IMG/VR virus record: IMGVR_UViG_3300025770_001492 | Location: 124,001 to 188,000 of that record | Length of the DNA stretch: 64,000 nt | Strand: one strand, 5' to 3' | Position numbers and translations under genes: made by a program | The notes under the pieces: generated by a model | The model's input: only the letters and a program-made list of their open reading frames with translations | The model's database searches: none | What the model was told of the DNA's origin: nothing | Part shown: piece after piece, positions 1 to 58,913 of the stretch | How positions within the stretch are numbered: position 1 is the stretch's first letter | Layout of the letters: each line of letters starts with the position of its first letter

Positions 1-116
1 TACTCTGCACATGCAGCGAGCATTTCTTTCGCTTCTTCAACATCAGAAGTAAACCACAATCCAACTTGAGGATGCTTTAAGGTTCTGCCTGTCTTTTTAT
101 TCAATAAAGTATACAT
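1..116 (-). CDS. hypothetical protein (partial, runs off window)
   Basis: ATG at 116 overlaps the stop of the upstream gene; open frame MYTLLNKKTGRTLKHPQVGLWF... to the window edge. Confidence 0.65.
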   Translation of the reverse strand, partial: MYTLLNKKTGRTLKHPQVGLWFTSDVEEAKEMLAACAE

Positions 117-508
117 CAACCTATATTAGTATCAGGCGATGGAACTTGAACCGTTGAGTTAGCATTATTTTGAGCTTGTCCAAATTGTTGAGGCTGACCT
201 ATGCCGCCGCCACGAACCGAACCAGATTTTGGCGTCGAGGGTGGGGACATATTAGAAGCAGGGGGAACAGGATTCGGCTGAGTGCCGGGACTCATGTTTG
301 AAGCTGGTCTTTTGTTGTTTGTTTGCAATTTGTCAGACACATTAAATGCCGATCTGGGCTTTTTAGAACTATTTAAATTATCTTGAGGATTGATGCCTGC
401 CATTTGTGGATTAGCAGGTGCTACAGGGCTTTCTCCTGCCCTTCCTGCTGCGTTCATTCCTGTGGCACTTGCTCCCGTGCCTTGCTCAAGCCATTTTCTG
501 AATTCCAT
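116..508 (-). CDS. low-complexity (P/Q/N/G/S) protein with capsid-targeting-like N-terminus
   Basis: Starts MEFRKWLE; PASNMSP repeated; TACATA 5 nt upstream of ATG. Confidence 0.7.
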   Translation of the reverse strand: MEFRKWLEQGTGASATGMNAAGRAGESPVAPANPQMAGINPQDNLNSSKKPRSAFNVSDKLQTNNKRPASNMSPGTQPNPVPPASNMSPPSTPKSGSVRGGGIGQPQQFGQAQNNANSTVQVPSPDTNIG

Positions 509-801: not shown

Positions 802-1062
802 TTACTTCTTTGCGTTATTGTCAGGCAAAAATTTTGCTGCATCGGCTGGCTTTAGCTGGCCGCTATCGATTGCTTTTATAACATTATTTTTTACAGCATC
901 TTTTACGGCTTTAGAATCTCCACCACTTTTGATTGTTTTTGTGGTGTCTGCTTTAATTTGCTGGCTCAACTGAGAATTCTCTGCGTCCTTTTCCGCATTG
1001 CCCTGTTGTCCCACTTCCATCTCTTTAAGAGATACCCATTTTTCAAAAGAATAATTATTCAT
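802..1062 (-). CDS. hypothetical protein, capsid-targeting-like N-terminus
   Basis: MNNYSFEKWVSLKE; TAGATA 7 nt upstream of ATG. Confidence 0.7.
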   Translation of the reverse strand: MNNYSFEKWVSLKEMEVGQQGNAEKDAENSQLSQQIKADTTKTIKSGGDSKAVKDAVKNNVIKAIDSGQLKPADAAKFLPDNNAKK

Positions 1063-7507: not shown

Positions 7508-8938
7508 TCAAGATCGACTTGCCTTGTTTATTATTTCTGTTGTTGACATGCCTTCAAGCAATTCAACAAATCTAACGTCTTCCACCAAATCGGAGCCAAT
7601 AACGACCTTGCCTTCCCAATCTCCACCTTTTACCAAAACATCAGGCATTATCTTTTTGATCAATGCATATGGAGTTTTCTGGTCAAAGGAAACGACAAAA
7701 TCAACACATTCTAACGCTGCCAGCATCTTTACTCTATCTTCTAGAGGAATTATTGGCCGCTTGTCACCTTTTATTCTTTTAATGCTATCATCAGAATTAA
7801 TGCCAACAACTAACTTGTCGCCAAACGATTTAGCTTCTTCCAAAACTTTTAAATGACCTGAATGTAATAGATCATAACACCCATTTGTAAAAACAAGTTT
7901 ATAATCTCTTTCTTGAGGAGGCATTGTCAATTTATCTGTACTCATAAGTATATCCGATGGTTTAATAGGCTTGTTGTGAGAGTTTTGCACATAAATTGCA
8001 CCAGCCTCATAAGCAATCTCACATGCATCAATTATATCCATCCCAACAGAAAGAGCCATGGCAAGGAAGGCGGCGAAGCAATCCCCTGCCCCAATTACAG
8101 ATTTAGCCTTGATGCTATCCCCCGATCTGTAATTAAAGTGCTTCCCGCCAACCTTACCGTATACTCCGTCGCCCCCATTTGTAACAACGACAGCCATGCA
8201 ACCGATTTTAGCTTGAAAATAATTGCACTGCTCTATCGGGTCTTCAAGCCCAGAAAGCTTTTTGGCTTCAAGAAAGTTAGGCTTAAACACAGTACATCCA
8301 CGCCACTTCTCAACCGGCCCATTTTTTGGGTCTACGATTGTTATAGTGTTTCCATCAGTGAGTGATGGCCAATCGACAAAAGTACCGTGAGAGTCTTCCT
8401 CGAAAATGCCTTTTCCATAATCTGAAAAGATTGCGACATCAAAACTTGATTTAAGCCACTCTGTTTGAAGTCGATCCCTAGCTTTTATAAAGTGTTCAGA
8501 TGAAAGTCCATAATTTTCCTTTTCAACATCAAGCCTGCATAGGGGGAAATCTCTTTGATAAAACCTGTTTTTTGTTGGTATTTTTTGACCGTATGATTCT
8601 TCAATATTCACAGATTCGTAAAAATTGACTTGGTTTTCATGCTGAAAACCAAGTCCCCAACTCTCAGAATTGAAAACTTTTAATGCCAAATCGTCAACAT
8701 ATCCCAAAAGTTCAACTCTTACAGGGAAGTGTTTAAATTGGGAGACAACATTGGCAGCACCACCAGGAACTGACTTTTCTGGCGATTCCCCTTCCATCAG
8801 CATCACAGGAATAGGGAATTCAGGACTGACTCGGTTTGCGCCAACTCTAAAATAGTTGTCAATCATGCAATCGCCAATAACTCCTATTCTTGGCGATTGC
8901 GTTTTGATGTTTTCTAAAAAAGTATTAAACTTATTCAT
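7508..8938 (-). CDS. hldE: bifunctional heptose-7-phosphate kinase / heptose-1-phosphate adenylyltransferase
   Basis: PfkB domain (GDCMID, RVSPE, GGAANV, SDYGKG, VDPK, GAGD) + FTNGCYDLLHSGH nucleotidyltransferase, KGGDW, STT. Confidence 0.92.
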   Translation of the reverse strand: MNKFNTFLENIKTQSPRIGVIGDCMIDNYFRVGANRVSPEFPIPVMLMEGESPEKSVPGGAANVVSQFKHFPVRVELLGYVDDLALKVFNSESWGLGFQHENQVNFYESVNIEESYGQKIPTKNRFYQRDFPLCRLDVEKENYGLSSEHFIKARDRLQTEWLKSSFDVAIFSDYGKGIFEEDSHGTFVDWPSLTDGNTITIVDPKNGPVEKWRGCTVFKPNFLEAKKLSGLEDPIEQCNYFQAKIGCMAVVVTNGGDGVYGKVGGKHFNYRSGDSIKAKSVIGAGDCFAAFLAMALSVGMDIIDACEIAYEAGAIYVQNSHNKPIKPSDILMSTDKLTMPPQERDYKLVFTNGCYDLLHSGHLKVLEEAKSFGDKLVVGINSDDSIKRIKGDKRPIIPLEDRVKMLAALECVDFVVSFDQKTPYALIKKIMPDVLVKGGDWEGKVVIGSDLVEDVRFVELLEGMSTTEIINKASRS

Positions 8939-12880: not shown

Positions 12881-13279
12881 TTACATGGGTGACTGAGAAT
12901 CCAAGCCTTGCAGAAGTGCGGTGTTCAACTGATCAACAGGAATCGTATAAACTTTGTTATCTGGATCTTCATAAGCACTGACTCTGATTTGCTTTCCATC
13001 ATCGTCTTTTTTAAACTTTTTCTTTGTTGTATCACTTGTATCGTTCATCATCTGGATTTTAGCATGGGTTATATTTCCATCAGAATCACGATCATACCCT
13101 AAAATTTTATATCCAGATAGGTTATATGAATTTCCACCTATAGAAAACTGAGAAATAGTCTGCGGACTGTCTGCAACTAGTTCAGGGGGTATTCCTAGCT
13201 CGTCTTCAATTTGGTTTAAATAATCTATTTTTTGTTTTTGATATTCCAAAAAATCTCTAAATGATAAATTGTTGTTCAT
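12881..13279 (-). CDS. hypothetical protein, capsid-targeting-like N-terminus
   Basis: MNNNLSFRDFLE; TATATA 4 nt upstream of ATG. Confidence 0.75.
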   Translation of the reverse strand: MNNNLSFRDFLEYQKQKIDYLNQIEDELGIPPELVADSPQTISQFSIGGNSYNLSGYKILGYDRDSDGNITHAKIQMMNDTSDTTKKKFKKDDDGKQIRVSAYEDPDNKVYTIPVDQLNTALLQGLDSQSPM

Positions 13280-34396: not shown

Positions 34397-35176
34397 TTAG
34401 TACCATTTCAGAGTATTAGTGATTGTTTCTATTATTTCAGAATTTTCCTGTGTAGGAAAGAAATTCAAATCAGTATCAGAAGGACTCATGGCCCACTCAT
34501 GTTGTCCCATTCCAGACTCTATGTTGTAGTTCAATATTCGAATCATCCCTTTTTCTTTTTCGAATATTATAGAAGTTTGATTTTCCTCGACTCTTTGATG
34601 ATCTGGTGCTTGGTTGCCATGTCCTTTAACTCCCAGTCTGATGATATAATTAGAATTACTTATTTTCTTAATGCCCTCATAGATGAAGATATTCTTTGCG
34701 TTTCTTCTTATAGAATCAGCCATTTGTACAACTAGGCTTTCGAGTTTATTATATTCTCTCTTTGGAGAATCTATATCCTCTTTATTTATCACTTGCACTT
34801 CGTCTAAAACTTCATTGGCGACTATATCTTCATATCCCCCATATCCGCCTCTGTTTATTTGAAAAATTCTTTTTGTATACCAAGTTGGGTTCCCAGTTAA
34901 ATCGCTTCCTAGTCTGTCGATCATGAGATTCAGACCAGTACCACACCAGCACTTTATAGAACCGGAATTATCTCCCCATTGTACCTCATTCATGAAATTG
35001 CTACGCCCTTCATTGGTTCCAATTTTTTTAGATGCGAGTATAGAAAACAGCTTTTCTAAATCAAAAGATTTTATAGGCATATCGTTTTGATGTGACTTCT
35101 CAGCATCTTTGTTGTTTTGATCAAATCCAAAAATATCTTTAAATTCTAACCATGTTTTAAAGCCTTTAACTGTCAT
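34397..35176 (-). CDS. hypothetical protein, capsid-targeting-like N-terminus
   Basis: MTVKGFKTWLE. Confidence 0.75.
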   Translation of the reverse strand: MTVKGFKTWLEFKDIFGFDQNNKDAEKSHQNDMPIKSFDLEKLFSILASKKIGTNEGRSNFMNEVQWGDNSGSIKCWCGTGLNLMIDRLGSDLTGNPTWYTKRIFQINRGGYGGYEDIVANEVLDEVQVINKEDIDSPKREYNKLESLVVQMADSIRRNAKNIFIYEGIKKISNSNYIIRLGVKGHGNQAPDHQRVEENQTSIIFEKEKGMIRILNYNIESGMGQHEWAMSPSDTDLNFFPTQENSEIIETITNTLKWY

Positions 35177-38229: not shown

Positions 38230-39384
38230 TTATTGGTTGTAATTAACTAGAATCACATCTCCAGACTCAGGGGCAGTATTAAATGTTATAATGGCTCCTG
38301 ATAAAGTGTAATCATTTGCACCACCAGTATTCTGGATGATGCCATTTAGATAAATACAATCAGTATTTGACAAAGGTGTTGCCGCCATTGTGAAGTCTGT
38401 ATTTGATCCATTAACTGTTCCTGTAGGAGTTTCTCTTGTTACCCAAGTATCTGTAACATATGAATCCGCAATGGTAAAGGCTGCACTTGAACTCATTGTC
38501 AGGTCGCCCCCAACTGCGTTGTAGGTAGTGTCAGATGCACCTTGTCCAACAAGCAATGCAGCAGAAGCTCCATCGGCAAGAGAAAGCCCACTAGAACCTA
38601 GAGCGAGAGTTGATCCATCAAGATTAACTTCAATATCATCAGCATTTACGGTAATTCCACCCGAAGTTGCAGCACCAATATTAACATCACCGCCAGATGC
38701 TGCTAGACCGCTTCCTGCACCGACTGAAATACCGCCAGCACCAAGGTTTAGTCCCGAATTAGTATCCAGATTTATTGTGATGTCGTTTGCATTTGCTGTT
38801 AATCCACCGCTTGTTGCGGCAACAACATCTACTGTTTCATCAGTCTTCGTAAGACCAGCACCAGCTACAAGATCGCCTAAAAGTTGTCCGGTTTGAGAGA
38901 ATTTTTCAAAAGTCAGAGCGGTTGTATCTAGAGTGATAGATCCGGTTGTAGTTAGCAACCAGCCAGTGTCTGCGTTTGAAGTTCCTTCTTCAATGAATGC
39001 AAACATGCCAGTTGTAACTTCGGCACTTGTGTTTGCGTCTGAAGATCTGACAGGAGCACCAGATGCGGTTACATCATAAATACCGTTTTGGTTACCAGTT
39101 GATTGATTCTTAAGAAGAATTCTATCGTCTGCTACAAGAGTCACTCCGTCTACGGTTTGACCTGCTGTGAATGCTGAAGCAAAAGTTCCATTAGACGTAG
39201 TTGCTACCCTAATGCTTTCTTTAAAATCAATTACACCACCTGCAACTTGAGCATCAACATATGCTTTCGTTGCAGCTTCCTGATTTGCTGTCGGATCTGT
39301 AAGATTGACAATTTTATTGGTTTGCAAGTCAAGATTGCCAGTAAATCTTAACTGACGAGCACCATCTGTTTGTGTTACGGCCAT
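38230..39384 (-). CDS. tail-fibre-like structural protein, paralog 1 (384 aa)
   Basis: AATK.YVD, DFKES.RVATT, DR.L.KNQ....NGIY, AGAGL/SGGL repeats, C-terminal beta-sandwich. Confidence 0.8.
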   Translation of the reverse strand: MAVTQTDGARQLRFTGNLDLQTNKIVNLTDPTANQEAATKAYVDAQVAGGVIDFKESIRVATTSNGTFASAFTAGQTVDGVTLVADDRILLKNQSTGNQNGIYDVTASGAPVRSSDANTSAEVTTGMFAFIEEGTSNADTGWLLTTTGSITLDTTALTFEKFSQTGQLLGDLVAGAGLTKTDETVDVVAATSGGLTANANDITINLDTNSGLNLGAGGISVGAGSGLAASGGDVNIGAATSGGITVNADDIEVNLDGSTLALGSSGLSLADGASAALLVGQGASDTTYNAVGGDLTMSSSAAFTIADSYVTDTWVTRETPTGTVNGSNTDFTMAATPLSNTDCIYLNGIIQNTGGANDYTLSGAIITFNTAPESGDVILVNYNQ

Positions 39385-39436: not shown

Positions 39437-40591
39437 TTATTTGGCATAATTAACTAATAAAACATCTCCGGTTTCAGGAGCACTATTGAAAGTGATTGAG
39501 TTTGTTGAAATGGTGTAATCATTTGAACCGCCAACATTTTGAAGTATACCATTTAAATGGACACATTCTGTTCCACTTAAAGGCGTTGCTGCCAACGTGT
39601 AAGAAGCATTGCTTCCATTTACAAGTCCTGATGGAACTTCTCTGTAAACCCAAGTATCTGTAACATATGAATCCGCAATGGTAAAGGCTGCACTTGAACT
39701 CATTGTCAGGTCGCCCCCAACTGCGTTGTAAGTCGAATCAGATGCACCTTGTCCAACAAGCAATGCAGCAGAGGCTCCATCGGCAAGAGAAAGACCACTA
39801 GCACCTAGAGCGAGAGTTGATCCGTCAAGATTTACTTGGATATCATCAGCATTTACGGTAATTCCACCCGAAGTTGCAGCACCAACATTAACGTCACCGC
39901 CAGATGCTGCCAAACCACTTCCTGCACCGACTGAGATACCGTTAGCACCAAGGTTTAGTCCCGAATTAGTATCTAGATTTATTGTGATGTCGTTTGCATT
40001 TGCTGTTAATCCACCGCTTGTTGCGGCAACAACATCTACTGTTTCAGCAGTCTTCGTAAGACCAGCACCAGCTACAAGATCTTCTAAAAGTTGTCCAACT
40101 TCACTGAATTTTTCAAAAGTCAGAGCCGTTGTATCTAAGGTGATAGTTCCAGTTGTAGTTAGTAACCATCCGGTTTTTGCGTTTGAAGTTCCTTCTTCTA
40201 CAAAACAAAACAGTCCACTTGTAACTTCTGCACTTGTGTCTGCATCTGATGACCTACTTGGAGCACCAGTAGCTTGTACTATGTAGATTCCGTTCTCGTC
40301 TCCTGATGACTGGTTTTTGATTAAAATTCTATCATTAGTTGCAAGAGTCACTCCGTCTATAACGTCGTTATTTTCAAAATCACTAGCTAGAGTTCCTGTT
40401 GCCGTAGTTGCAACTCTGACACTTTCTTTAAAATCAATTACACCACCTGCAACTTGAGCATCAACATATGATTTCGTAGCAGCGTCTTGATTTGCTGTCG
40501 GATCTGTAAGATTGACAATTTTATTGGTTTGCAAGTCAAGATTACCAGTAAATCTTAATTGACGAGCACCATCTATTTGTGTTACGGCCAT
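39437..40591 (-). CDS. tail-fibre-like structural protein, paralog 2 (384 aa)
   Basis: Colinear and highly similar to 38230..39384. Confidence 0.8.
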   Translation of the reverse strand: MAVTQIDGARQLRFTGNLDLQTNKIVNLTDPTANQDAATKSYVDAQVAGGVIDFKESVRVATTATGTLASDFENNDVIDGVTLATNDRILIKNQSSGDENGIYIVQATGAPSRSSDADTSAEVTSGLFCFVEEGTSNAKTGWLLTTTGTITLDTTALTFEKFSEVGQLLEDLVAGAGLTKTAETVDVVAATSGGLTANANDITINLDTNSGLNLGANGISVGAGSGLAASGGDVNVGAATSGGITVNADDIQVNLDGSTLALGASGLSLADGASAALLVGQGASDSTYNAVGGDLTMSSSAAFTIADSYVTDTWVYREVPSGLVNGSNASYTLAATPLSGTECVHLNGILQNVGGSNDYTISTNSITFNSAPETGDVLLVNYAK

Positions 40592-42800: not shown

Positions 42801-43682
42801 ATGTTTTGGAAAGACAGCTTAGTTTCTGTAGATCAATTAGATAAGTATTCTATATCTGAAATATTTTCTCAGACTGATTTGTTTAAAATAAGTCCTTTTC
42901 CGTGCGGTTCGGGAGATAAAGTTTTTGCCACTATGTTCTTTGAACCATCCACTAGAACTAGACTTTCTTTCGAGTCTGCAATTGTTAGACATGATTACCG
43001 TTTAATAACTGTTGAAAATGGGAAAGTAAGCTCGTCTGACAAAAAAGGCGAATCTTTAGAAGATTGTGTCAAAACAGTCTCGCAGTATGTTGACTGCATC
43101 ATACTAAGACACCCAGAAAAGGGTGCTGCTAAAAGAGCAGCAAAAGTTTCAGATGTTCCAATTATAAACGCTGGTGATGGCGACGGAGAACATCCCACTC
43201 AATCTTTGTTGGACATGTATACTATTTACGAGAATAAAAAGACAGATAAACAAAACTGTTGGTCTTTGGAATCTGTGTTTGAACCATTAAATGTCCTTTT
43301 TTACGCAGATTTAGAAAATGCCAGAACAGTCAATTCTCTTGAAAAACTTCTTTCTTTATATGGGGCATCTGTCGAAAAAAGAAGTCTTTTTGACGACCCC
43401 AATAAAGATAAAGATTTATGGAAAAAGGCTGATGTCGTTTATATCACTAGGCTTCAAAAAGAAAGAAAAGATCCTGATCGGCCTTTATGCAAAATACCAG
43501 AAAATGTGGTAAATGAAGAAATATTAAAATCAACCAATGAAAATTGTATTTTTCTTCATCCCTTACCAAGGTGTGGCGAAGTAGATCCAGCAATAGACAA
43601 AGATGAAAGAGTACTATTTTGGCCACAGGTTAAAAATGGCATGTACACCAGAATGGCTTTAATTTCTATGATGAATATCTGA
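42801..43682 (+). CDS. pyrB: aspartate carbamoyltransferase catalytic subunit
   Basis: FFEPSTRTRLSFE, KGESL.D, RH, INAGDG..EHPTQ.LLD, TRLQKER, HPLPR. Confidence 0.93.
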   Translation: MFWKDSLVSVDQLDKYSISEIFSQTDLFKISPFPCGSGDKVFATMFFEPSTRTRLSFESAIVRHDYRLITVENGKVSSSDKKGESLEDCVKTVSQYVDCIILRHPEKGAAKRAAKVSDVPIINAGDGDGEHPTQSLLDMYTIYENKKTDKQNCWSLESVFEPLNVLFYADLENARTVNSLEKLLSLYGASVEKRSLFDDPNKDKDLWKKADVVYITRLQKERKDPDRPLCKIPENVVNEEILKSTNENCIFLHPLPRCGEVDPAIDKDERVLFWPQVKNGMYTRMALISMMNI

Positions 43683-43705
43683 ACCTAAAAACTATATATT
43701 TTGTT

Positions 43706-43960
43706 ATGGAATTTAGATATTGGATAGAATCTGAAGCGAAAGCACTGGCGTCTAGAGACATGGTGCTTAATTTTCTTCAAGATAAATTAAACATTAATGA
43801 TCCCGAAGCAATCCTAAATATGTCTACAGATCAGATAGACTCAGGCGTTATTGCAGATCTTTCCCAAAGAGGAATTATATCTTCTGATGATGAGCTTCAA
43901 TCTATAATCAAGAACGGAATTAAGATATCTGAATTAATAAACATTCTTTCAAAGCAATGA
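43706..43960 (+). CDS. hypothetical protein, capsid-targeting-like N-terminus
   Basis: MEFRYWIESE; TATATA 7 nt upstream of ATG. Confidence 0.75.
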   Translation: MEFRYWIESEAKALASRDMVLNFLQDKLNINDPEAILNMSTDQIDSGVIADLSQRGIISSDDELQSIIKNGIKISELINILSKQ

Positions 43961-43970
43961 GGCAAAATGA

Positions 43971-44762
43971 ATGGGAAATTATAAAATTTTAATGTGTAAG
44001 CCAACGCATTACGGCATTAAATATTCTATAAACCCTTGGATGAATCTAGAAAATCAATCAGACTACTCAAAATCTCAAAAACAATGGCAAAAACTTCATG
44101 ACACAATCCTCTCCACAGGAGCAGAAATTGAACACGTTGAACCTCATTCAGATGTGCCAGATATAGTATTCACAGCAAACGCTGCTCTTATATATGAAAA
44201 TAAATGCATCATATCGAACTTCAAATTTGATGAAAGAAAAAAAGAAGAAAAATTTTACGAGGAAAAACTTGGTGAATATTACGACATTGTCAGATTACCA
44301 AGAGAGTTAAATTTTGAAGGAGCAGGAGATGCTTTGTTTTCAGAAAATAAATTAATTATGGCGCATGGATTTAGGACTAGTATTGATTCTTTACATGCAA
44401 TTGACGAGGTGTTGGAACTTGATTCAATTAAGGTCAAATTGATAGACCCTTATTTTTATCATTTAGATACATGTTTTTGTCCTCTTGAAAAAAATAAAGC
44501 AATTTACTTTCCGAAAGCATTCCACAGGGATTCTGTTAAAGCTTTAAATGAAAATATGGACATGATACCTGTTCCTGAAAACGATGCAAAAAAGTTCGCA
44601 TGTAATGCTGTGGTAATTGGAAATTATGTTATAATTCCAGAAGGATGTGATGAAACTAAAAGACTTTTAGAGAGAATGAACTTTAATGTACTGTGCTGCG
44701 ATATGAGTGAATTCATAAAAGCAGGCGGTGCTTGCAAATGTCTGACTCTCATGATGGTGTAA
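43971..44762 (+). CDS. amidinotransferase-superfamily hydrolase (DDAH / arginine dihydrolase-like)
   Basis: INPWM, PDIVFTAN, FEGAGD, YHLDTCF, FACN, EF.KAGG..KCL. Confidence 0.88.
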   Translation: MGNYKILMCKPTHYGIKYSINPWMNLENQSDYSKSQKQWQKLHDTILSTGAEIEHVEPHSDVPDIVFTANAALIYENKCIISNFKFDERKKEEKFYEEKLGEYYDIVRLPRELNFEGAGDALFSENKLIMAHGFRTSIDSLHAIDEVLELDSIKVKLIDPYFYHLDTCFCPLEKNKAIYFPKAFHRDSVKALNENMDMIPVPENDAKKFACNAVVIGNYVIIPEGCDETKRLLERMNFNVLCCDMSEFIKAGGACKCLTLMMV

Positions 44763-44764
44763 TA

Positions 44765-45415
44765 ATGGAAATACTAATAATTCGACACGGACAGAGTGAA
44801 CACAATGTCTCCTATGAAGGCACTTTGGATTCTTCTTTGACCAAAAAAGGAAATGAGCAAGTTTACAATACAGCTTGCTGGCTTAAAGATAACTTTGATT
44901 TATCTGGTTACAAGGGAGTATCGAGTCCATATTTAAGAACTCTTCAAACTTCTTATATTTTACGAAGTCAAACTAATATTGATTTCGAAGTAAATGAACT
45001 TGTTCGAGAATATCATGTAAAAAAAGATGAACCTGAACTTGTAGAAAATCAAGGAATGCCTATTAAATTTAGGGAAAATCTGTTTGGAGATTTTGACTGG
45101 AGCAGATGGAATGGGAAAGATGGAAAGTATGGAGTTTCTGAAGACCTCAAAATATACCCGAATGAAACTATGGACGATTTCTTGGGAAGAATAGAATTTT
45201 ATTTAAAAGGTTTAAATGAAGATTCTAAATATCTCATCGTAGGACACGGAGCATCATGTCGTGCTCTCCATGATGTATCAATAAACAAAGATTTAAAAAG
45301 TATCAAAGAAAGATATGCAAAACCGATTAAAGAGTATAAAGATAGCATTGAGAATTCTAGTTTAATATGGATTAAAGATGAAAAATGCAAATGGTTTTCT
45401 AAAGTAGTTTGGTAA
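44765..45415 (+). CDS. histidine phosphatase family protein
   Basis: IIRHGQSEHN, SSPYLRTLQT, E, LIVGHG. Confidence 0.88.
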   Translation: MEILIIRHGQSEHNVSYEGTLDSSLTKKGNEQVYNTACWLKDNFDLSGYKGVSSPYLRTLQTSYILRSQTNIDFEVNELVREYHVKKDEPELVENQGMPIKFRENLFGDFDWSRWNGKDGKYGVSEDLKIYPNETMDDFLGRIEFYLKGLNEDSKYLIVGHGASCRALHDVSINKDLKSIKERYAKPIKEYKDSIENSSLIWIKDEKCKWFSKVVW

Positions 45416-45420
45416 AAAAC

Positions 45421-46044
45421 ATGAAACCTTGTTGGATTTTAACAACCCCAAGATCTGGATCGACCTTTTTAAGCAGGAGATTAAACCAGACAGGACTTTT
45501 TAACCCACCGTTTGCAGAGTGGTATAATAGCGAGACACTCTTTGATGAATTTCTTGTAAAGAACCCAGTTCCGTTTTGCAAGATACATAAATTTCAATAT
45601 AATGAACATCTGCCGTCGTTTCCAAAAAATGTATTTTTTATACATTTAACTAGAAAAGACTTGGCAGAAGCAACAGTTTCACAGTATTTCGCAGGACATA
45701 CTAAAATGTGGAACACTACGTGTGAGAAAGACCTCTCAGAACACGCAAACGTGGATGTCCCTTACAATAGAGATACAATGCTTCGCTTGTACTTTGATAT
45801 GATACATGAGTCAAAAGGATGGGTCGAATTCTTAAAAGATAAAAAACACCTAGAGTTCGATTATGAGGACCTAATGACTGATTGTAGTTCTATTGTGGAC
45901 AAAATAGTTGAATTAACTGAGACTCAAAACAATGAACCAAACAAATATAAAGACATGCACACTCCATTAAAGATGTATCATCCACTTAAGGAAGAATATG
46001 TAAAAAAATTCAAGGAAACAATTAAACAAATAGAGAATAATTAA
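45421..46044 (+). CDS. Stf0-like sulfotransferase
   Basis: TTPRSGSTFL, HLTRKDL....VS..FA...W, YEDL. Confidence 0.8.
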   Translation: MKPCWILTTPRSGSTFLSRRLNQTGLFNPPFAEWYNSETLFDEFLVKNPVPFCKIHKFQYNEHLPSFPKNVFFIHLTRKDLAEATVSQYFAGHTKMWNTTCEKDLSEHANVDVPYNRDTMLRLYFDMIHESKGWVEFLKDKKHLEFDYEDLMTDCSSIVDKIVELTETQNNEPNKYKDMHTPLKMYHPLKEEYVKKFKETIKQIENN

Positions 46045-46433: not shown

Positions 46434-47888
46434 ATGAAGAAAGCTGTAATAAAGGTTCAAAACTGCTATTCTTGGTTAAACACCAATTGTGATGATACCC
46501 GAATAAATCTTTGGAAAGCCCTTAGACATAGAGAAAAAGGGTATTTTCACAGTCGTCTTTATAAACAAAGGCTGTGGGATGGATATACAGAGTTTTTCAA
46601 AAAAGAAAGTGGAAGATTTTTATCTGGCCTACTGCCAGAGGTTACTGCTGCTTTAGATCATTGGAAAATACCTCATACCATTATCGATGAGAGAGGTGAG
46701 CCTGAATTTTTGTATGACGAAATTGGCTCGGACTTCTTGGATCAATGGATTCATCACCTTCCTCAGAAAGATCAAGATCGATGGCAAGGAATGCGTGACT
46801 ATCAAATTGATCTCACCAATCAAGTCATCAAACACAAGAGAGGTGTTGTTTTTGCCCCAACCTCAGCAGGTAAAACTGCAATCATGGTTGCAATTTTAAA
46901 AACAATTCCTGAAAACGTGCCAACTCTTATTCTTGCAAATAAGAAAAGCCTTTGTGATCAAAACTATGATGCCTTGACAAGCTGGGGATTTGAAAATGTC
47001 GGACGACTTTATGACAAGTACAAAGATCCAAACATCTTCACATGTGCGACTGTACAATCTTTGCATAAAATAGAAAAGTTAATTCCTAAAGTTAAAGTCA
47101 TGGTAGTGGATGAAATTCATGACATGATGAGTAAGACGCCAAAGAAGTTTTACACAAAAATGAAAAACTGCTCGGTTAGAGTAGCCGTCAGTGCTACGCC
47201 TTTTAAATTTGGCGGAAAAGATAAAACACAAAAGTTCTCTGTAAAAGGCCACTTTGGACCTGTGCTTAAAACAAAGTCAGCAGATAACGACAAGGGAATC
47301 CTTACAACAAAGACTCTTCAAGATAGAGGAATCTTATCTTCTTGTAACTGTACGTTCTATCCAGTGAAAGAACCTCAGATTCCGTATGATATTTATCTTG
47401 ATGCAGTAACCAATGGTATAGCTGAGAGTTGGCATTTTCACGACATTGTGAGCCGATTGGCTAGATCTTTGAAGGGCAGAACCCTTATCTTGGTCGAAAG
47501 ACTTGCACACGGAGAAGCCTTGCAAAGTCTGATTCCTGATGCTTTATGGGTTCGTGGAGAAGATAACCTAGATGCAAGAAAAGATGTCATCGACCAGCTA
47601 CAGTACTCTAAAGGCAATAAAATAGCAATCGCCACCCAAGGTATTTTCAATGCTGGGATCAACGTGTTTGTCCACAATCTTATCAATGCGGCTGGAGGAC
47701 AAGCAGATCACCAGATTATACAGCGATTTGGGCGAGGATTGAGACTTGCATCTGATAAAGACGGACTTGAATACTATGATTTTGTTTTCGATATAAATGA
47801 ATATTTGCTAGATCATTCAAAGAAAAGAATTAAAATTATAAAGAATGAAGGACATAAAGTAGATATTCGTGAAGAATTAGACTTTTAA
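46434..47888 (+). CDS. uvsW: UvsW-like SF2 helicase
   Basis: WDGY, RDYQ, PTSAGKT, DEIH, SATP, GINV, QRFGRGLR. Confidence 0.88.
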   Translation: MKKAVIKVQNCYSWLNTNCDDTRINLWKALRHREKGYFHSRLYKQRLWDGYTEFFKKESGRFLSGLLPEVTAALDHWKIPHTIIDERGEPEFLYDEIGSDFLDQWIHHLPQKDQDRWQGMRDYQIDLTNQVIKHKRGVVFAPTSAGKTAIMVAILKTIPENVPTLILANKKSLCDQNYDALTSWGFENVGRLYDKYKDPNIFTCATVQSLHKIEKLIPKVKVMVVDEIHDMMSKTPKKFYTKMKNCSVRVAVSATPFKFGGKDKTQKFSVKGHFGPVLKTKSADNDKGILTTKTLQDRGILSSCNCTFYPVKEPQIPYDIYLDAVTNGIAESWHFHDIVSRLARSLKGRTLILVERLAHGEALQSLIPDALWVRGEDNLDARKDVIDQLQYSKGNKIAIATQGIFNAGINVFVHNLINAAGGQADHQIIQRFGRGLRLASDKDGLEYYDFVFDINEYLLDHSKKRIKIIKNEGHKVDIREELDF

Positions 47889-47904
47889 ACATAAATAATT
47901 TATT

Positions 47905-49884
47905 ATGTTTAGAAATTGGATAGAAAATAAAGAACAGTTAAATAAATCGGTCAACAAGTCAATTGACGAAATTGTTTATGGCGATATGGATGAAAAGACA
48001 GATGCTCTGTCTAAAAAAGAGCATCCTCTCTTTAAAGGAAGATTTAAGGTAGACCCACCACCTTCCAACACCTCGAAAGAAACTATCGAGGAACTTAAAG
48101 AGCTAGAAAAGATGAGTCATTTTAAGTCCAAAGATATCATGAAAGATATGAAGGATTTTGATGTGGCTCAAGTCAAGCCATTTGAAGATTATCTTAAACA
48201 AAATTCTCTAGATTTCGATTTCAAAATGCTTAACAAAATACTTAAGCAAGGCGAAATACTTGGACTAAAGCTTAAAAAGAAGTTCAACAGACCAAGACCG
48301 CATCAGATCGCACCCAAGATGGGTCTAAACATAATGTATCATGATTTGAAAACAGACGATACGCCAGCTTATCCTTCAAATCACTCTTTGATTTCTTCTT
48401 TAATTGCTCTATATCTTTCTTCGCTATATCCGAAACATGAAAAAGGATTCATGGACATTGCAGACAGGATCGGAATTAGCCGATTATATGGAGGGACTCA
48501 TTATCGAAGCGATCATGATTCTGCAAGGAAACTAGCTAAGGACATCATGAAGTCTTGGAAACCTGCTGTTAAGCCTGCAAAATATTCGTTCACTGAGTGG
48601 ATGCTGAAGCTCGAAGACCAAGGTATCCACGCATTCATGCGAGTGGCAAGTGAAAAATATAAAGACGACAGAAGTAAAGACATTCTTGTTATTTATGGAA
48701 ATACGACGCCAATTAAAGACAAACTAAAAGAAATAACAAAATTTACTTGGAACCAAGGTGGCTATTGGAGCACGGGCAGGTGGAGTCTGAATAATGATGT
48801 GATTCAAAAACTCATAGAGCTAACTGGAATAACTGATTTGAAAGAAATCATAGATGCTGGACCGCAATTTAACGCTGATTCGACTGAGGCAGAAGAAGAG
48901 AAAGATGCACCCAAGAGTCAAGTTGATGCGATTCTTGGTAACATGGAACAGGAAATTGAAAACGCTAAAGGCAAAGCGGGCGGTAAAGCAAAACAAATTC
49001 TCACCATGATTGAAAACTATCTTGAAAAATTGGCCAACTTGGTTGATGAAGAAATCAAATCAGGATTCGTTAAAGACTTTATGCGGTTTGCTGCTAAATT
49101 CCACAACTACTCTTTCAATAATCAAATGTTGATTTACGCACAAAAGAAAGATGCAACTTACGTAAACTCTGAAAGTCGTTGGCTTAAACTCGGAAGAGCA
49201 GTTACCAATAAGGATCAAGGAATTATAATTCTTGCGCCTATGACAGGAAAGAAAAAAGAAAAAGATGCAGATTTAGAGGGGCAAAAGGAAGAAAGAAAAT
49301 TTGTATTCTTCAGACCCGTTAAAGTTTATGATATTTCTTCAACACAAGTCATATCAGGACAAGAAGACAAGGCAAAAGTGTTTGAGCCAAATGATTGGCG
49401 ACAAGATACTGATGAAAACACTGAAGAACTTACCCTGCTCATCAATGCAGGAATAGAAATAGCCAAGCAAAAAGATATATCTATCGACTATGAGGAACTA
49501 GCTCAAGGTACGGGCGGCTACTCTGCGGGTGGAAAGATTGTAATCAACAACACCTATGGTGGAATCAACAAGTTTAGCACTCTCGTACATGAACTCGCCC
49601 ATGAAATACTCCATCAAGTAATGAAGCCAGAAGAAAGAGCAAAAGAAAACAAAAGAGATTTTGAATATGATGCTGAATCTGTGGCCTATATCGTTCTTCA
49701 ATACTTTGGATTTGAAACCAAAGACTCTCCAAGATATATCGCTCTATGGAAAGGCGACAGCAAAGCAGTTAAAGGAAGAAGAGAAAATATCAGCAAAGCA
49801 TCAAAGGAAATCATTCAAGGCATAAAAAAGAATGTCGAGGATATGGTAATTCAAGATGATCTCCCTGAAGAAGATGCTGCCTAA
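47905..49884 (+). CDS. polyvalent fusion: PAP2-type phosphatase + ArdC-N ssDNA-binding + zincin metallopeptidase
   Basis: K..FNRPRP / YPSNH / SR..G.HY.SD; FHNYSFNNQMLI..Q..AT..W..LGR.V; HELAH...EYDAES. Confidence 0.85.
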   Translation: MFRNWIENKEQLNKSVNKSIDEIVYGDMDEKTDALSKKEHPLFKGRFKVDPPPSNTSKETIEELKELEKMSHFKSKDIMKDMKDFDVAQVKPFEDYLKQNSLDFDFKMLNKILKQGEILGLKLKKKFNRPRPHQIAPKMGLNIMYHDLKTDDTPAYPSNHSLISSLIALYLSSLYPKHEKGFMDIADRIGISRLYGGTHYRSDHDSARKLAKDIMKSWKPAVKPAKYSFTEWMLKLEDQGIHAFMRVASEKYKDDRSKDILVIYGNTTPIKDKLKEITKFTWNQGGYWSTGRWSLNNDVIQKLIELTGITDLKEIIDAGPQFNADSTEAEEEKDAPKSQVDAILGNMEQEIENAKGKAGGKAKQILTMIENYLEKLANLVDEEIKSGFVKDFMRFAAKFHNYSFNNQMLIYAQKKDATYVNSESRWLKLGRAVTNKDQGIIILAPMTGKKKEKDADLEGQKEERKFVFFRPVKVYDISSTQVISGQEDKAKVFEPNDWRQDTDENTEELTLLINAGIEIAKQKDISIDYEELAQGTGGYSAGGKIVINNTYGGINKFSTLVHELAHEILHQVMKPEERAKENKRDFEYDAESVAYIVLQYFGFETKDSPRYIALWKGDSKAVKGRRENISKASKEIIQGIKKNVEDMVIQDDLPEEDAA

Positions 49885-49919
49885 ATTGAAGAACTTGTTC
49901 AAGAAGTTTCAGTATTGAT

Positions 49920-50129
49920 TCATTCGTAGTGACCTCCGAAGACCATATTGAGGCCGTATGGTTGGGTAGGAGGTTGAGTAACGACAACAGTATCTCCAAT
50001 TAGTTCCGGGTTGGATTTTGGTACGTTGATTAGAAGAGTTGTGCCATCTGGATAGATGACTTCTATACAGAAGTCTTTGTCCGTGTCTAGGTCCGAACGG
50101 TGTTTGGTTTGAATCATAGTTGTAGTCAT
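49920..50129 (-). CDS. small hypothetical protein
   Basis: Coupled (ATGA) to the upstream gene. Confidence 0.55.
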   Translation of the reverse strand: MTTTMIQTKHRSDLDTDKDFCIEVIYPDGTTLLINVPKSNPELIGDTVVVTQPPTQPYGLNMVFGGHYE

Positions 50130-50635
50130 CGTTGGTTAAGAGCATTTCCGGGGCATTGTTCGATTGCAGGAGCAACTTTTATCCAAAGCTTTTCGGGCGG
50201 GATCTTGTAATGAAGTCTCAAATCTTGACATATCCAAGACTGCTGGCCAGACAAAAGCTTGAAAGCACAGTTCTCTTCATCTGGAAAAGGAATGACATTG
50301 TAAATATCGCCACCATATTTTTCTTCAATCCACTCCAAACACACATCTGCATCTGGAAAGACTTCTTCAGAAAAATAAAGAAGAAACCCATCTTCTGGAC
50401 TCTTAATCGACTTCTGACTGGCCGCTTCGGTGACAAGCCGGTCAGCACCAACTACGATTGGAGATAATCCTTGCCCCACTGAGCCAGCAGGAGCGAAGTT
50501 ATGCCGGTTTCCAGATGCATCGTCCCACACCCAAGCATTTTTGTGCTTGTATGGCTTGACTACATTGATGCCTTGAATTTTTTCAAATTCAAAATCCTCA
50601 GAAGATTCATTCTGACTATTGAATATCTTGCTCAT
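50126..50635 (-). CDS. DUF6717-like protein
   Basis: I.V.KPY...WV.DD, V.GAD, F.L.FS...FP, W.C..L..Y...PE.L. Confidence 0.6.
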   Translation of the reverse strand: MSKIFNSQNESSEDFEFEKIQGINVVKPYKHKNAWVWDDASGNRHNFAPAGSVGQGLSPIVVGADRLVTEAASQKSIKSPEDGFLLYFSEEVFPDADVCLEWIEEKYGGDIYNVIPFPDEENCAFKLLSGQQSWICQDLRLHYKIPPEKLWIKVAPAIEQCPGNALNQR

Positions 50636-53183: not shown

Positions 53184-53186
53184 CAG

Positions 53187-53260
53187 TAGGGCCGACTGGA
53201 CTCGAACCAGTAACCGCCGGTTTATGAGACCGGTGAACTAACCAATTGTTCTACAGCCCC
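53187..53260 (-). tRNA. tRNA with CAT anticodon (elongator Met or Ile2); CCA not encoded
   Basis: GGGGCTG/CGGCCCT acceptor, CCGGT-CTCATAA-ACCGG anticodon arm, ACTGG-TTCGAGT-CCAGT T-arm. Confidence 0.92.
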
Positions 53261-58425: not shown

Positions 58426-58484
58426 TTTTAGATCCTTCGATTTTAAATTAGTAGAATTTCGATTTTAATCATAAATAATGTATC

Positions 58485-58913
58485 ATGAATTTTAAAGACT
58501 TTATTGTATCAGAAGAAGATATGGCACCGATGGGAGACCCTATGGGCGGTGGAATGCCGATGGGAGACCCTATGGGCGGTGGAATGCCGATGGACCCTAT
58601 GGGTGGAGCACCCCCAATGGACCCTATGGGAGGGATGGGTGGAGGAGCACCCCCAATGGACCCTATGGGAGGGATGGGTGGAGGAGCACCAGGCGGCGTT
58701 CAACCACCAATACAATTTAAACCTAATTCTGTTTGGGATGTTTTAGATAAAATATTAAATGGAGAGCCTGTTAACGATAAAGAAGATGAAGAAAAAGAAA
58801 AAGAAAAAGAAGTAGATCAATCTGGACAAGAAAATTTAGATATGTTAAGTTCCCCTCAACAGCAAGAACCGGGAATGGCCCCCACTGGTCAAGTTGAGAA
58901 TCCTCAGCTTTAA
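58485..58913 (+). CDS. Met/Gly/Pro repeat protein, capsid-targeting-like N-terminus
   Basis: MNFKDFIVSEE; (PMGDPMGGGM) and (APPMDPMGGMGGG) repeats; TAAATA 7 nt upstream of ATG. Confidence 0.8.
   Translation: MNFKDFIVSEEDMAPMGDPMGGGMPMGDPMGGGMPMDPMGGAPPMDPMGGMGGGAPPMDPMGGMGGGAPGGVQPPIQFKPNSVWDVLDKILNGEPVNDKEDEEKEKEKEVDQSGQENLDMLSSPQQQEPGMAPTGQVENPQL

What the first reader, a model, noticed from the sequence alone, without database searches (positions are those of the whole stretch)
47905..49884. PAP2 phosphatase-ArdC-metallopeptidase fusion with two targeting-like peptides: possible injected polyprotein
Seen: N-terminal tag, then a PAP2/acid-phosphatase domain (PSNH in place of PSGH), then a second tag-like YSFTEWMLKLE exactly at the domain boundary. 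After that come a small GNTTPIKDKLK..W domain, ArdC-N and an HELAH zincin. Known: ArdC-N plus metallopeptidase is the core of polyvalent proteins that travel with and protect incoming DNA. Inference: two cargo genes fused, possibly re-separated by the prohead protease. The phosphatase might counter nucleotide- or lipid-phosphate-based defence signals.
Basis: partly seen in the sequence, partly recalled or inferred. Interest (0 to 1): 0.7.

Follow-up and report, generated by a model that had tools for sequence, protein, structure and literature searches.

The report
Tagged phosphatase–ArdC fusion, huge marine phage
A giant marine phage has joined two once-separate genes, a soluble phosphatase and an ArdC-type DNA-protecting protease, into one protein, and each half keeps a short peptide that closely resembles phage T4's signal for loading proteins into the capsid; about twenty other proteins of this phage carry the same peptide, so the peptide may mark the set of proteins injected with the DNA.

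Summary
ORF 47905-49884 (+, 659 aa) reads tag, PAP2 phosphatase, tag, small alpha/beta domain, ArdC-N, HExxH zincin.

**Fusion.** Among 1.84 billion cluster representatives only its own cluster has the full fusion. Relatives encode each half separately, and each half starts with the tag. The junction is identical in assemblies from four studies.

**Tag.** The core F-[KR]-x-[WF]-[LI]-E starts 24 of 334 genes here (about 3 expected). The tagged proteins are not paralogues. Orthologues in a collinear 595-kb relative, LR756511.1, keep the tag. It has the same aromatic-x-x-aromatic-aliphatic pattern as T4's capsid targeting sequence MKTYQEFIAE. LR756511.1 encodes T4-type capsid, portal and prohead-protease genes.

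**Best reading (about 0.5).** A recent fusion of two capsid-targeted cargo proteins. Packaging, injection and cleavage at the inner tag are inferred, not shown. The phosphatase substrate is unknown.

**Verdict.** A new variant of known kinds: ArdC-type polyvalent proteins and the T4 capsid targeting sequence. The tag system is the more interesting part.

The parts
47905..49884 (+). Whole ORF, 659 aa: tag1, PAP2, linker, tag2, small domain, acidic linker, ArdC-N, zincin
   Evidence: The junction and the whole ORF are identical in independent metagenome assemblies.
47890..47899 (+). CATAAATAAT motif 6 nt upstream of the ATG, with no Shine-Dalgarno sequence; possibly a promoter -10 element giving a near-leaderless mRNA (inference)
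   Evidence: The same 10-mer precedes two other tagged genes. ATAAATA lies within 30 nt upstream of 4/28 tagged versus 7/306 untagged genes (Fisher P 0.009).
47908..47925 (+). Tag 1 (F2-R-N-W-I-E7), a T4 CTS-like N-terminal peptide
   Evidence: Conserved as MFRNWIE in P0002-P0004. Short low-confidence helix at residues 2-8 in the AF2 model.
48052..48555 (+). Soluble PAP2 / class-A-acid-phosphatase-like domain (residues ~50-217) with KxxxxxxRP, PSNH and SRxxxxxHxxxD motifs
48556..48582 (+). Fusion junction / linker (residues 218-226, WKPAVKPAK). It contains a KPA..KPA repeat that matches both the tail of the standalone PAP2 and the N-terminal extension of the standalone ArdC-like proteins.
   Evidence: The linker has in-frame indels among P0001-P0004.
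48583..48615 (+). Tag 2 (YSFTEWMLKLE, residues 227-237): the former N-terminus of the ArdC-like gene
   Evidence: W232 is at least 90% conserved in 38 family members. Standalone homologues start here.
48622..48864 (+). Small alpha/beta domain (residues ~240-320, 'YGNT.PIKD.LK..GF.YF.G.WS'), family-specific, probably a nucleic-acid-binding or polyvalent-protein accessory domain
   Evidence: Only weak fold matches: T4 UvsW N-domain Z 4.9, XPB N-terminal half 2fz4 Z 4.0, DUF3560/DUF5710/'large polyvalent protein associated domain' at E 0.01-0.14.
48994..49329 (+). ArdC-N ssDNA-binding domain (residues 364-475)
   Evidence: N406, W426, R431, P445 nearly invariant
49417..49854 (+). Zincin metallopeptidase (MPTase) domain (residues ~505-650). 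Motif H562-E563-x-x-H566-E567-x-x-H570 at nt 49588-49614, plus E587.

Best explanation
**Shown**
- The gene is a recent, lineage-specific, in-frame fusion of two formerly separate genes.
- One is a soluble class-A-type PAP2 phosphomonoesterase with an intact catalytic set.
- The other is an ArdC-type protein: a small alpha/beta domain, the ArdC-N ssDNA-binding domain and a zincin peptidase.
- Each gene carried its own short N-terminal peptide, M-x(0-5)-F-[KR]-x-[WF]-[LI]-E. After the fusion the second peptide sits at the domain boundary.
- The host genome is a marine phage of roughly 500 kb. It is collinear with the 595-kb huge phage LR756511.1, which has T4-type portal, prohead protease and major capsid genes.

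**Inferred**
- The peptide works like the T4 capsid targeting sequence (CTS). It would dock the protein onto the scaffolding core of the prohead, so the protein is packaged and later ejected with the DNA.
- In the newly infected cell, ArdC-N would bind incoming or exposed single-stranded DNA, and its zincin would act on a host restriction or defence component, or on the protein itself.
- The phosphatase would remove a phosphate from a substrate that is still unknown.
- The two halves may be separated again, either by the Glu-specific prohead protease near the inner tag or by the protein's own zincin. This last step is the weakest.
For: **Fusion**
- Of 8,940 hits among 1.84e9 representatives, the only one among the best 150 listed that covers residues 1-659 is the query's own cluster. 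The other listed hits match either ~222-659, starting at their own residues 4-13, or 13-230.
- Standalone forms of both halves carry the tag.
- The fusion is intact in 85-90% identical variants and in four independent assemblies.

**Domain identities**
-.

**The tag is a separate module**
- It starts 24 of 334 genes against 3.1 expected (P 2e-15), and the tagged proteins share no BLAST similarity with each other.
- Synonymous codons vary, so the conservation is at the protein level.
- In relatives it is often followed by G/S/A-rich linkers, with 3-5 tagged genes per 20 kb. More distant ArdC-bearing phage loci have none among about 220 genes.
- Six of nine orthologue pairs examined that share 29-66% identity with LR756511.1 keep the tag.
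- Tagged proteins with a recognisable domain are enzymes of an effector type: NUDIX, PAP2 and ArdC.

**Likeness to the T4 CTS**
- The T4 CTS is MKTYQEFIAE.
- In T4, targeting depends on residues 4 and 7 (Y, F) and processing on residues 8 and 10 (I, E) (PMC9026906).
- LR756511.1 tags read MKTFSEWLE.., MKTFAEWME.. and MKTFNQWLE...

**T4-type head machinery in the clade**
- LR756511.1 has Gp23 (E 5e-87), Peptidase_S77 (E 6.7e-28) and Portal_T4 (E 1.2e-74).
- 116 of 334 genes of this genome have collinear homologues in LR756511.1. That head module lies about 23 kb past the last collinear match, where this contig ends.

**Precedent**
- ArdC travels with the DNA during conjugation, and ArdC-N plus a zincin peptidase domain (MPTase) is the commonest pair in the multidomain 'polyvalent proteins' that phages and plasmids are predicted to deliver with their DNA (PMC5512222).
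Against: - No virion proteome, no N-terminal sequencing and no expression timing are available.
- The contig itself (CheckV 49% complete) holds no head genes. A T4-type head is inferred from a relative.
- The conserved Glu usually follows the aliphatic residue directly ([WF]-[LI]-E). The T4 rule [LI]-x-E is met by only some tags and not by the inner tag (..MLKLE).
- Roughly 6% of genes are tagged, far more than T4's handful of CTS proteins.
- One tagged protein is a heptose kinase/adenylyltransferase-like enzyme whose orthologue has no tag.
- Tags are not enriched next to the capsid gene in 20 related loci.
- AF2 places both tag helices with low confidence.
- The fusion may be selectively neutral, since it occurs in only one shallow lineage.
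Confidence: 0.5

Rival explanations
1. The fusion is real, but the tag is not a capsid-loading signal. It would be a short docking helix for some other hub, such as a phage or host chaperone, a protease or degron receptor, the replication or transcription machinery, or a membrane. The PAP2-ArdC protein would then be made and would act inside the infected cell, and the inner tag would be a functionless relic.
For: - The tag sits on many proteins (about 6% of genes), including one metabolic-looking enzyme.
- It is not enriched near the head module.
- The cleavage motif is inconsistent.
- Tagged genes often have their own AT-rich promoter-like motif and no Shine-Dalgarno sequence, which could mark any temporal class.
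- Anti-restriction genes are often early genes (general knowledge).
Against: - The match to the experimentally mapped T4 CTS positions is specific, and the clade has T4-type head genes.
- A tag followed by a flexible linker and then an unrelated enzyme is the usual layout of cargo-loading peptides.
- ArdC-type proteins are known to travel with the DNA.
Confidence: 0.33
2. The 'tag' is simply the first helix of each folded domain, a structural element that recurs by convergence, and not a transferable module.
For: - In the ArdC-like family the tag helix directly precedes the first strand of the small domain, and W232 is at least 90% conserved.
- More distant members use MNW[YF].. instead.
Against: - The same motif starts more than 20 proteins with no detectable similarity to each other.
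- In relatives it is often separated from the rest of the protein by low-complexity G/S/A linkers.
- It is poorly packed in both AF2 models.
- It precedes unrelated folds: PAP2, NUDIX and the ArdC small domain.
Confidence: 0.1
3. The long ORF is an assembly or sequencing artefact that joins two adjacent genes.
For: The full architecture is found in a single 50%-identity cluster only.
Against: - The identical junction appears in Logan contigs of four runs from four studies, with 0 differences and 0 indels over 48300-48899.
- The sequence is present in at least 17 marine runs.
- P0002-P0004 (85-90% identity) keep one frame through a linker that itself has in-frame indels.
Confidence: 0.02

Closest known systems
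ArdC anti-restriction protein of IncW plasmids R388/pSa (PDB 6I89, 6SNA)
   Same: It has an ArdC-N ssDNA-binding domain followed by an HExxH zincin. It is the best solved-structure match for residues ~360-650 (Foldseek E 1.7e-7, probability 1.0). Pfam ArdcN scores above its threshold.
   Different: Sequence identity is only about 15%. The phage protein has three extra N-terminal modules (tag, PAP2, tag plus small domain). Delivery would be through a capsid and not a type IV secretion system. Activity is untested.
Polyvalent proteins of phages and conjugative elements (Iyer et al. 2017, PMC5512222)
   Same: It is a multidomain conflict protein built around ArdC-N plus a zincin peptidase (MPTase), predicted to travel with the DNA and possibly to be cut into parts by its own peptidase.
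   Different: That survey never mentions a PAP2 or any other phosphatase domain (0 occurrences). This protein has only 2-3 effector domains and carries a CTS-like tag at each former gene start.
T4 capsid targeting sequence of IPII/IPIII, and the packaged effectors IPI* and Alt
   Same: It is an N-terminal peptide of about 10 residues with the aromatic-x-x-aromatic-aliphatic pattern followed by Glu. T4's MKTYQEFIAE compares with MKTF.EWLE or M.F[KR].[WF][LI]E here. It sits on unrelated cargo proteins, and the clade has T4-type gp20/gp21/gp23 genes.
   Different: The position of the Glu differs ([WF]-[LI]-E against F-I-A-E). Ten times more proteins carry it. Some tags are followed by long flexible linkers. 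An internal copy exists after the fusion. Neither encapsidation nor cleavage has been shown.
Class A non-specific acid phosphatases (PhoN, PhoC, P. aeruginosa enzyme 7F17/7F18)
   Same: It is a soluble PAP2 fold with all three signature motifs and the N-terminal PPP..S..T..EL region.
   Different: There is no signal peptide. Motif 2 is PSNH, not PSGH. The gene is phage-encoded, tagged and fused to ArdC. The score is far below the PhoC equivalog cut-off (29 against 430 bits).
Encapsulin cargo-loading peptides (from general knowledge, not tested here)
   Same: A short conserved terminal peptide plus a flexible linker directs unrelated enzymes into an HK97-fold shell.
   Different: Those peptides are usually C-terminal and have other motifs. 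Encapsulins have no DNA, no ejection and no maturation protease.

Membership tests
PAP2 superfamily (PF01569) | Three motifs: KxxxxxxRP, PSGH, SRxxxxxHxxxD | tested here: met
   K124..R131-P132, P157-S158-N159-H160 and R193..H199..D203 are invariant in A2, apart from G159N, which the phage subgroup shares. The Pfam score of 37.4 exceeds the cut-off of 27.2.
Class A non-specific acid phosphatase (PhoC/PhoN type) | Secreted periplasmic enzyme with a signal peptide; equivalog-level similarity | tested here: not met
   The N-terminus is the hydrophilic tag, not a signal peptide. NCBIfam PhoC scores 28.9 bits against a cut-off of 430. The similarity is at fold and motif level only.
PAP2 superfamily | Phosphomonoesterase activity and substrate | not testable with these tools
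   Needs the purified domain and a substrate panel.
ArdC family | ArdC-N ssDNA-binding domain | tested here: met
   Pfam ArdcN scores 35.5 against a cut-off of 22.6 over residues 364-475. The conserved residues N406, W426, R431 and P445 are present.
ArdC family | C-terminal zincin (HExxH plus a third ligand) with the ArdC fold | tested here: met
   H562, E563, H566, H570 and E587 are invariant. Foldseek matches 6I89/6SNA over 259 columns at probability 1.0.
ArdC family | Anti-restriction activity and transfer with the DNA | not testable with these tools
PHROG 7245 is annotated 'anti-restriction protein', which is an annotation and not a test.
Polyvalent proteins (Iyer et al. 2017) | Two or more conflict-related domains in one polypeptide of a phage or conjugative element, typically including an MPTase | tested here: met
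   PAP2, small domain, ArdC-N and MPTase lie in one ORF of a phage genome.
Polyvalent proteins (Iyer et al. 2017) | Packaged in the capsid and delivered with the DNA | not testable with these tools
   Only inferred from the tag.
T4-type capsid targeting sequence | N-terminal peptide of 10-19 residues with targeting determinants at positions 4 and 7 (aromatic) and an aliphatic residue at 8 | tested here: met
   The consensus is F(0), [KR](1), x, [WF](3), [LI](4) within the first 10 residues. The T4 positions are taken from PMC9026906. In tag 1 the aromatics are at residues 2 and 5, so the spacing is kept but the register is 2 residues shorter.
T4-type capsid targeting sequence | gp21 cleavage site [LI]-x-E at the end of the peptide | tested here: inconclusive
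   Glu follows in most tags, but mostly as [WF]-[LI]-E. [LI]-x-E occurs in some tags (WLIKE, WVSLKE, FLLNE). Tag 2 (MLKLE) does not fit. Tag 1 has I-D-E at residues 20-22.
T4-type capsid targeting sequence | The phage has a T4-type prohead protease, scaffold, capsid protein and portal | tested here: inconclusive
   None is found in the 245-kb contig, which is 49% complete. All are present in the collinear relative LR756511.1, which also carries the tags.
T4-type capsid targeting sequence | The peptide is sufficient for encapsidation and is removed on maturation | not testable with these tools
   Needs virion proteomics or reporter fusions. The complex prediction was not accepted for these sequences.

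The most novel reading that the evidence does not exclude
A conserved peptide like the T4 capsid targeting sequence, M-x(0-5)-F-[KR]-x-[WF]-[LI]-E, marks dozens of unrelated proteins for loading into the capsid. These include a NUDIX hydrolase, a PAP2 phosphatase and an ArdC-type protein. The phages that use it form a widespread clade of ~500-600-kb aquatic phages with T4-type heads. If so, a large injected 'effector proteome' could be read straight from the sequence. On this reading the PAP2-ArdC protein is a two-cargo polyprotein. It would be cut at or near the inner tag during head maturation, and would deliver both a phosphatase and an anti-restriction protein with the DNA.
Probability: 0.3. 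Interest if true: 0.8.

Novelty: new variant of a known kind. Interest (0 to 1): 0.62.

Why it matters
- **A readable sorting signal.** If the tag is a capsid-loading signal, the set of proteins that huge uncultured phages inject could be predicted from sequence alone. This half-genome already gives about 20 candidates. Most have no known function. The few with recognisable domains (NUDIX, PAP2, ArdC) look like host-takeover or counter-defence enzymes.
- **A new domain for polyvalent proteins.** The fusion adds a phosphatase to the repertoire of ArdC-type polyvalent proteins.
- **A natural example of modularity.** The fusion shows that tagged cargo genes are modular units that can be joined, with the old tag kept at the seam.
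- **A possible tool.** A portable loading tag for T4-type capsids from a different lineage could be useful for protein-delivery phage engineering in laboratory systems.
- **If the tag does something else.** It would still be an undescribed, strongly conserved N-terminal sorting or binding motif of a very abundant phage clade. The clade's capsid protein has 388 IMG/VR matches, and the best 80 kept are 78-92% identical.

Tried and rejected
- **Nearby phage genomes.** Megablast of the region against INPHARED found nothing. tblastn found only ArdC-like C-terminal halves in 8 records, so no phage record holds the fusion.
- **Gene adjacency in relatives.** In loci that carry a standalone half, the other half is not adjacent (L001, L002, L013, L014). 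The ancestral gene order could not be shown.
- **PAP2 fused to a virion protein.** I asked whether the long K/E-rich proteins with an N-terminal PAP2 domain (P0182/P0202) are virion proteins. PHROGs gave no annotation for the neighbours in L038.
- **Literature search for the tag.** A full-text search for FKEWL, FKNWL and similar strings found nothing relevant.
- **Promoter and terminator scan (47500-50300).** Promoter-like sites were no more frequent than in shuffled sequence, and no terminator was found.
- **Fold of the small domain.** No match was significant. Foldseek against the PDB gave E of at least 0.16. VIA-align gave Z no higher than 4.9. AFDB clusters gave E of at least 0.01. I treat the DUF5710, DUF3560 and polyvalent-associated-domain hits as leads only.
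- **Head genes in this phage.** Peptidase_S77, Gp23 and Portal_T4 were absent from the contig and from four fragmentary relatives. Walking beyond the contig end by exact-protein look-ups reached about 15 kb of fibre-like and sugar-modification genes but no head module, so I stopped.
- **Complex prediction.** A job with a tag peptide plus the LR756511.1 scaffold and protease was not accepted, because those proteins are not from the window or from a protein search. It was not run, so there is no result either way.
- **Tag enrichment near the capsid gene.** In 20 related loci the tag frequency was 47/536, about the genome-wide rate.
- **T4-late-promoter link.** The association of ATAAATA with tagged genes is weak (P 0.009, 4 genes) and says nothing about timing.
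- **RNA-level explanation of the tag.** Rejected, because codons vary synonymously and the distance from the ATG varies by 0-5 codons.
Full report
**1. What is there**

The window is bases 124001-188000 of a 245,522-bp single-contig IMG/VR phage record with 37.7% GC. CheckV rates it about 49% complete.

The ORF at 47905-49884 (+) encodes 659 aa. An in-frame stop lies two codons upstream of its ATG, so the start is fixed.

The domains were confirmed as follows.
- **PAP2.** Pfam scores PAP2 over residues 118-203 above its gathering threshold.
- **ArdC-N.** Pfam scores ArdcN over residues 364-475 above its gathering threshold. PHROG 7245 ('anti-restriction protein') covers 393-636.
- **Relation to solved phosphatases.** phmmer against the PDB links residues 50-217 to soluble class A acid phosphatases (7F18, E 1e-8).
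- **PAP2 catalytic residues.** An alignment with standalone relatives shows every catalytic residue conserved: K124, R131, S158, H160, R193, H199 and D203. PSNH replaces PSGH in this phage subgroup only.
- **Structure.** An AF2 model built on 100 homologues is confident for residues 240-650 (pLDDT about 90). Its best solved match is R388 ArdC (6I89/6SNA, E 1.7e-7, probability 1.0, 259 columns).
- **Zincin.** The motif is H562-E-x-x-H566-E-x-x-H570 plus E587, and these residues are invariant in the close family.
- **Small domain.** Residues 240-320 form a small alpha/beta domain specific to this family. Its fold matches are weak: T4 UvsW N-domain Z 4.9, the N-terminal half of XPB (2fz4) Z 4.0, and DUF3560, DUF5710 and 'large polyvalent protein associated domain' at E 0.01-0.14. 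I leave its identity open.

**2. It is a fusion of two genes, and it is real**

A word-indexed search of 5.8 billion proteins found the full architecture only in the query's own cluster and in three variants of 85-90% identity. A full HMMER scan of 1.84 billion cluster representatives agreed: among the best 150 hits listed, the only one covering residues 1-659 is the query's own cluster.

Dozens of homologues of 36-66% identity are standalone proteins of 430-600 aa. They match residues ~222-659 starting at their own residues 4-13. A standalone 219-aa PAP2 protein (P0079) is 56% identical over residues 19-217.

Examples are MKFADWLLKEEE..LTFREWLILLE..MSFRQWLLME and ..LSFLEWLFEQE. W232 is at least 90% conserved in 38 members. 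The standalone PAP2 begins MKFKLWLEG.

The seam reads ..KSWKPA-VKPAKYSF... It resembles both the C-terminal tail of P0079 (..NSKIPT) and the N-terminal extension of the nearest standalone ArdC-like proteins (..QSKPAQLSF..). This suggests a deletion between two short K-P-A-coding repeats. That is an inference.

The sequence is present in at least 17 marine or seawater metagenome runs. Assembled contigs of four runs from four studies cover the junction with no difference and no indel. These are assembled contigs, not raw reads. The 85-90% variants keep the frame even though the linker carries in-frame indels. An artefact is excluded for practical purposes.

**3. The tags belong to a genome-wide system**

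The numbers are as follows.
- F..W[ILMV] falls in the first 12 residues in 11 of its 24 occurrences among 334 predicted genes (P 1.5e-10).
- With F or W at the second aromatic position, 24 genes start with the motif against 3.1 expected (P 2e-15). About 21 remain after removing hydrophobic signal-like N-termini.
- The consensus is M-x(0-5)-F-[KR]-x-[WF]-[LI]-E.

Several properties point to a separate protein-level module.
- The tagged proteins share no BLAST similarity with each other.
- Codons vary synonymously, and the distance from the ATG varies, so the signal is in the protein and not the RNA.
- Only three tagged proteins have recognisable domains: this ORF, a NUDIX hydrolase, and a heptose kinase/adenylyltransferase-like enzyme whose orthologue lacks the tag.
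- Related huge-phage fragments carry 3-5 tagged genes per 20 kb, often followed by G/S/A-rich linkers. More distant ArdC-bearing phage loci have none among about 220 genes.

Internal tags at domain seams recur in two other proteins.
- The ORF after P0079 has ..GMKFKEWLIKE.. at about residue 178.
- The 1085-aa and 1380-aa PAP2 proteins have ..KLAKFITKED.. in front of their PAP2 domain.

**4. What phage, and why the T4 analogy is more than a resemblance**

The nearest record in INPHARED is LR756511.1, a 595-kb uncultured huge phage.
- 116 of the 334 genes here have homologues there, with median identity 42%. They lie in collinear order (1-245 kb here against 191-493 kb there).
- LR756511.1 has about two dozen tagged genes, such as MKTFSEWLEADRE, MKTFAEWMEERE and MKFADWLELKDE.
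- Six of nine orthologue pairs examined keep the tag at 29-66% identity.
- LR756511.1 encodes a T4-type major capsid protein (Gp23, E 5e-87), prohead protease (Peptidase_S77, E 6.7e-28, plus a paralogue) and portal (E 1.2e-74). These sit in one module at 523-534 kb with a coiled-coil scaffold-like gene between protease and capsid gene.
- That module lies about 23 kb past the last match to our contig, where the contig ends. Its absence here is therefore expected.
- The capsid protein has 388 IMG/VR matches, and the best 80 kept are 78-92% identical, on contigs up to 533 kb. This is a large clade.

In T4 the capsid targeting sequence (CTS) is MKTYQEFIAE. Suppressor analysis located targeting at residues 4 and 7 (Y, F) and processing at residues 8 and 10 (I, E) (PMC9026906). 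The tag has the same aromatic-x-x-aromatic-aliphatic core, usually followed by Glu. Several LR756511.1 tags even share the leading MKT. This supports 'works like a CTS'. Membership cannot be tested here.

**5. Limits of that reading**

- Glu mostly follows the aliphatic residue directly. T4's [LI]-x-E rule is met by only some tags and not by the inner tag (MLKLE).
- Tag 1 is followed by I-D-E at residues 20-22.
- The number of tagged genes is far above T4's.
- Tags are not enriched beside the capsid gene in 20 related loci (47/536). However, several relatives have a small ORF inside the head module that starts MKTF.QY[LIV].
- AF2 does not place the tag helices with confidence.
- No proteomic or timing data exist.
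- A complex prediction with the relative's scaffold and protease was not accepted by the tool.

**6. Mechanism**

*Shown:* a soluble PAP2 enzyme with an intact active site is covalently joined to an ArdC-type ssDNA-binding zincin protein through a former N-terminal tag.

*Inferred, with an overall confidence of about 0.5:*
- Tag 1, and perhaps tag 2, dock the protein to the prohead core, so it is packaged and ejected with the DNA.
- ArdC-N binds exposed ssDNA. The zincin acts on a defence protein or on the polyprotein itself, as proposed for the zincin peptidase (MPTase) domains of polyvalent proteins (PMC5512222).
- The phosphatase hydrolyses an unknown phosphomonoester. Phage phosphatases that defeat nucleotide-based defence are known, but they belong to another fold (a Macro-domain ADPR-1''-phosphate phosphatase). 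The counter-defence idea is therefore plausible but unsupported here.
- Re-separation of the halves is the least supported step, at about 0.25.

**7. Novelty**

ArdC-N plus a zincin peptidase, and capsid targeting sequences, are both known. Three things are new here.
- A PAP2 domain in such a protein. The polyvalent-protein survey mentions no phosphatase at all.
- The two-tag seam, which documents a fusion of cargo modules.
- A CTS-like tag system on about 6% of the genes of a widespread huge-phage clade. I found no description of it.

I rate the finding a new variant of known kinds, with interest 0.62.

Noticed in passing
window 116-508(-), 802-1062(-), 12881-13279(-), 34397-35176(-), 43706-43960(+), 58485-58913(+); weaker at 7508-8938(-): Other genes in the window start with the same tag: MEFRKWLEQG, MNNYSFEKWVSLKE, MNNNLSFRDFLEY, MTVKGFKTWLEF, MEFRYWIESE and MNFKDFIVSEE. 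None has a Pfam or PHROG match. Outside the window the tag starts, among others, a NUDIX hydrolase (genome 218514-218939) and a 995-aa protein (214067-217054).
   Followed up: partly
window 47890-47899, 58469-58478; genome 219535-219544(-): The 10-mer CATAAATAAT lies 4-6 nt upstream of the ATG of three tagged genes that lack a Shine-Dalgarno sequence. It resembles the T4-type late promoter core (TATAAATA, from memory) and would give near-leaderless mRNAs. The association with tags is weak (Fisher P 0.009).
   Followed up: partly
L002:671-1843: The ORF after the standalone PAP2 gene P0079 (4-bp overlap) has an internal ..GMKFKEWLIKESAEDLL.. at about residue 178, between two different-looking halves. 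This is either another in-frame fusion of tagged modules or an internal start.
   Followed up: no
P0182, P0202 (L038:1451-5593): These 1085-aa and 1380-aa proteins have an N-terminal PAP2 domain of the same subfamily, preceded by a tag-like KLAKFITKED and followed by about 800-1100 residues of K/E-rich low-complexity sequence. They lie in a one-strand gene block of an unannotated 10-kb contig.
   Followed up: partly
whole genome against LR756511.1 (loci L042-L071): The contig is collinear with 191-493 kb of the 595-kb huge phage LR756511.1 (116 shared genes, median 42% identity). The clade's T4-type capsid protein has 388 IMG/VR matches; the best 80 kept are 78-92% identical, on contigs up to 533 kb.
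   Followed up: yes
genome 107030-109762(-) and 114260-115645(-) (loci L008:7030-9762, L008:14260-15645): The DnaE-like polymerase is split into two ORFs (461 aa and 910 aa) about 4.5 kb apart, with other genes between them, one of them tagged. In LR756511.1 it is a single 1179-aa ORF.
   Followed up: no
L114, L121, L133, L146, L157 and others; LR756511.1 531014-533587(-): The portal proteins of the clade begin with an aromatic-rich N-terminus (M.W.DFFK[LI]F.Y). In several relatives a small ORF inside the head module, on the opposite strand, starts MKTF.QY[LIV]..E, which is very close to T4's MKTYQEFIAE.
   Followed up: no
window 42801-46044: Just upstream, on the same strand, lies a run of metabolic genes: an aspartate/ornithine carbamoyltransferase-like gene, a DDAH/amidinotransferase-like gene, a histidine phosphatase and a sulfotransferase. 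A ResIII/DEAD helicase follows at 46434-47888. This may be a small-molecule or DNA/sugar-modification pathway.
   Followed up: no
genome 117459-122479(-): The phage carries PrkA kinase and SpoVR homologues, with a 424-aa gene between them. LR756511.1 shares them at 55-66% identity.
   Followed up: no
window 38230-39384(-) and 39437-40591(-): Two adjacent 384-aa paralogues match PHROGs annotated as head decoration, tail fibre or virion structural protein. A tRNA-Met gene lies at 53186-53260(-).
   Followed up: no
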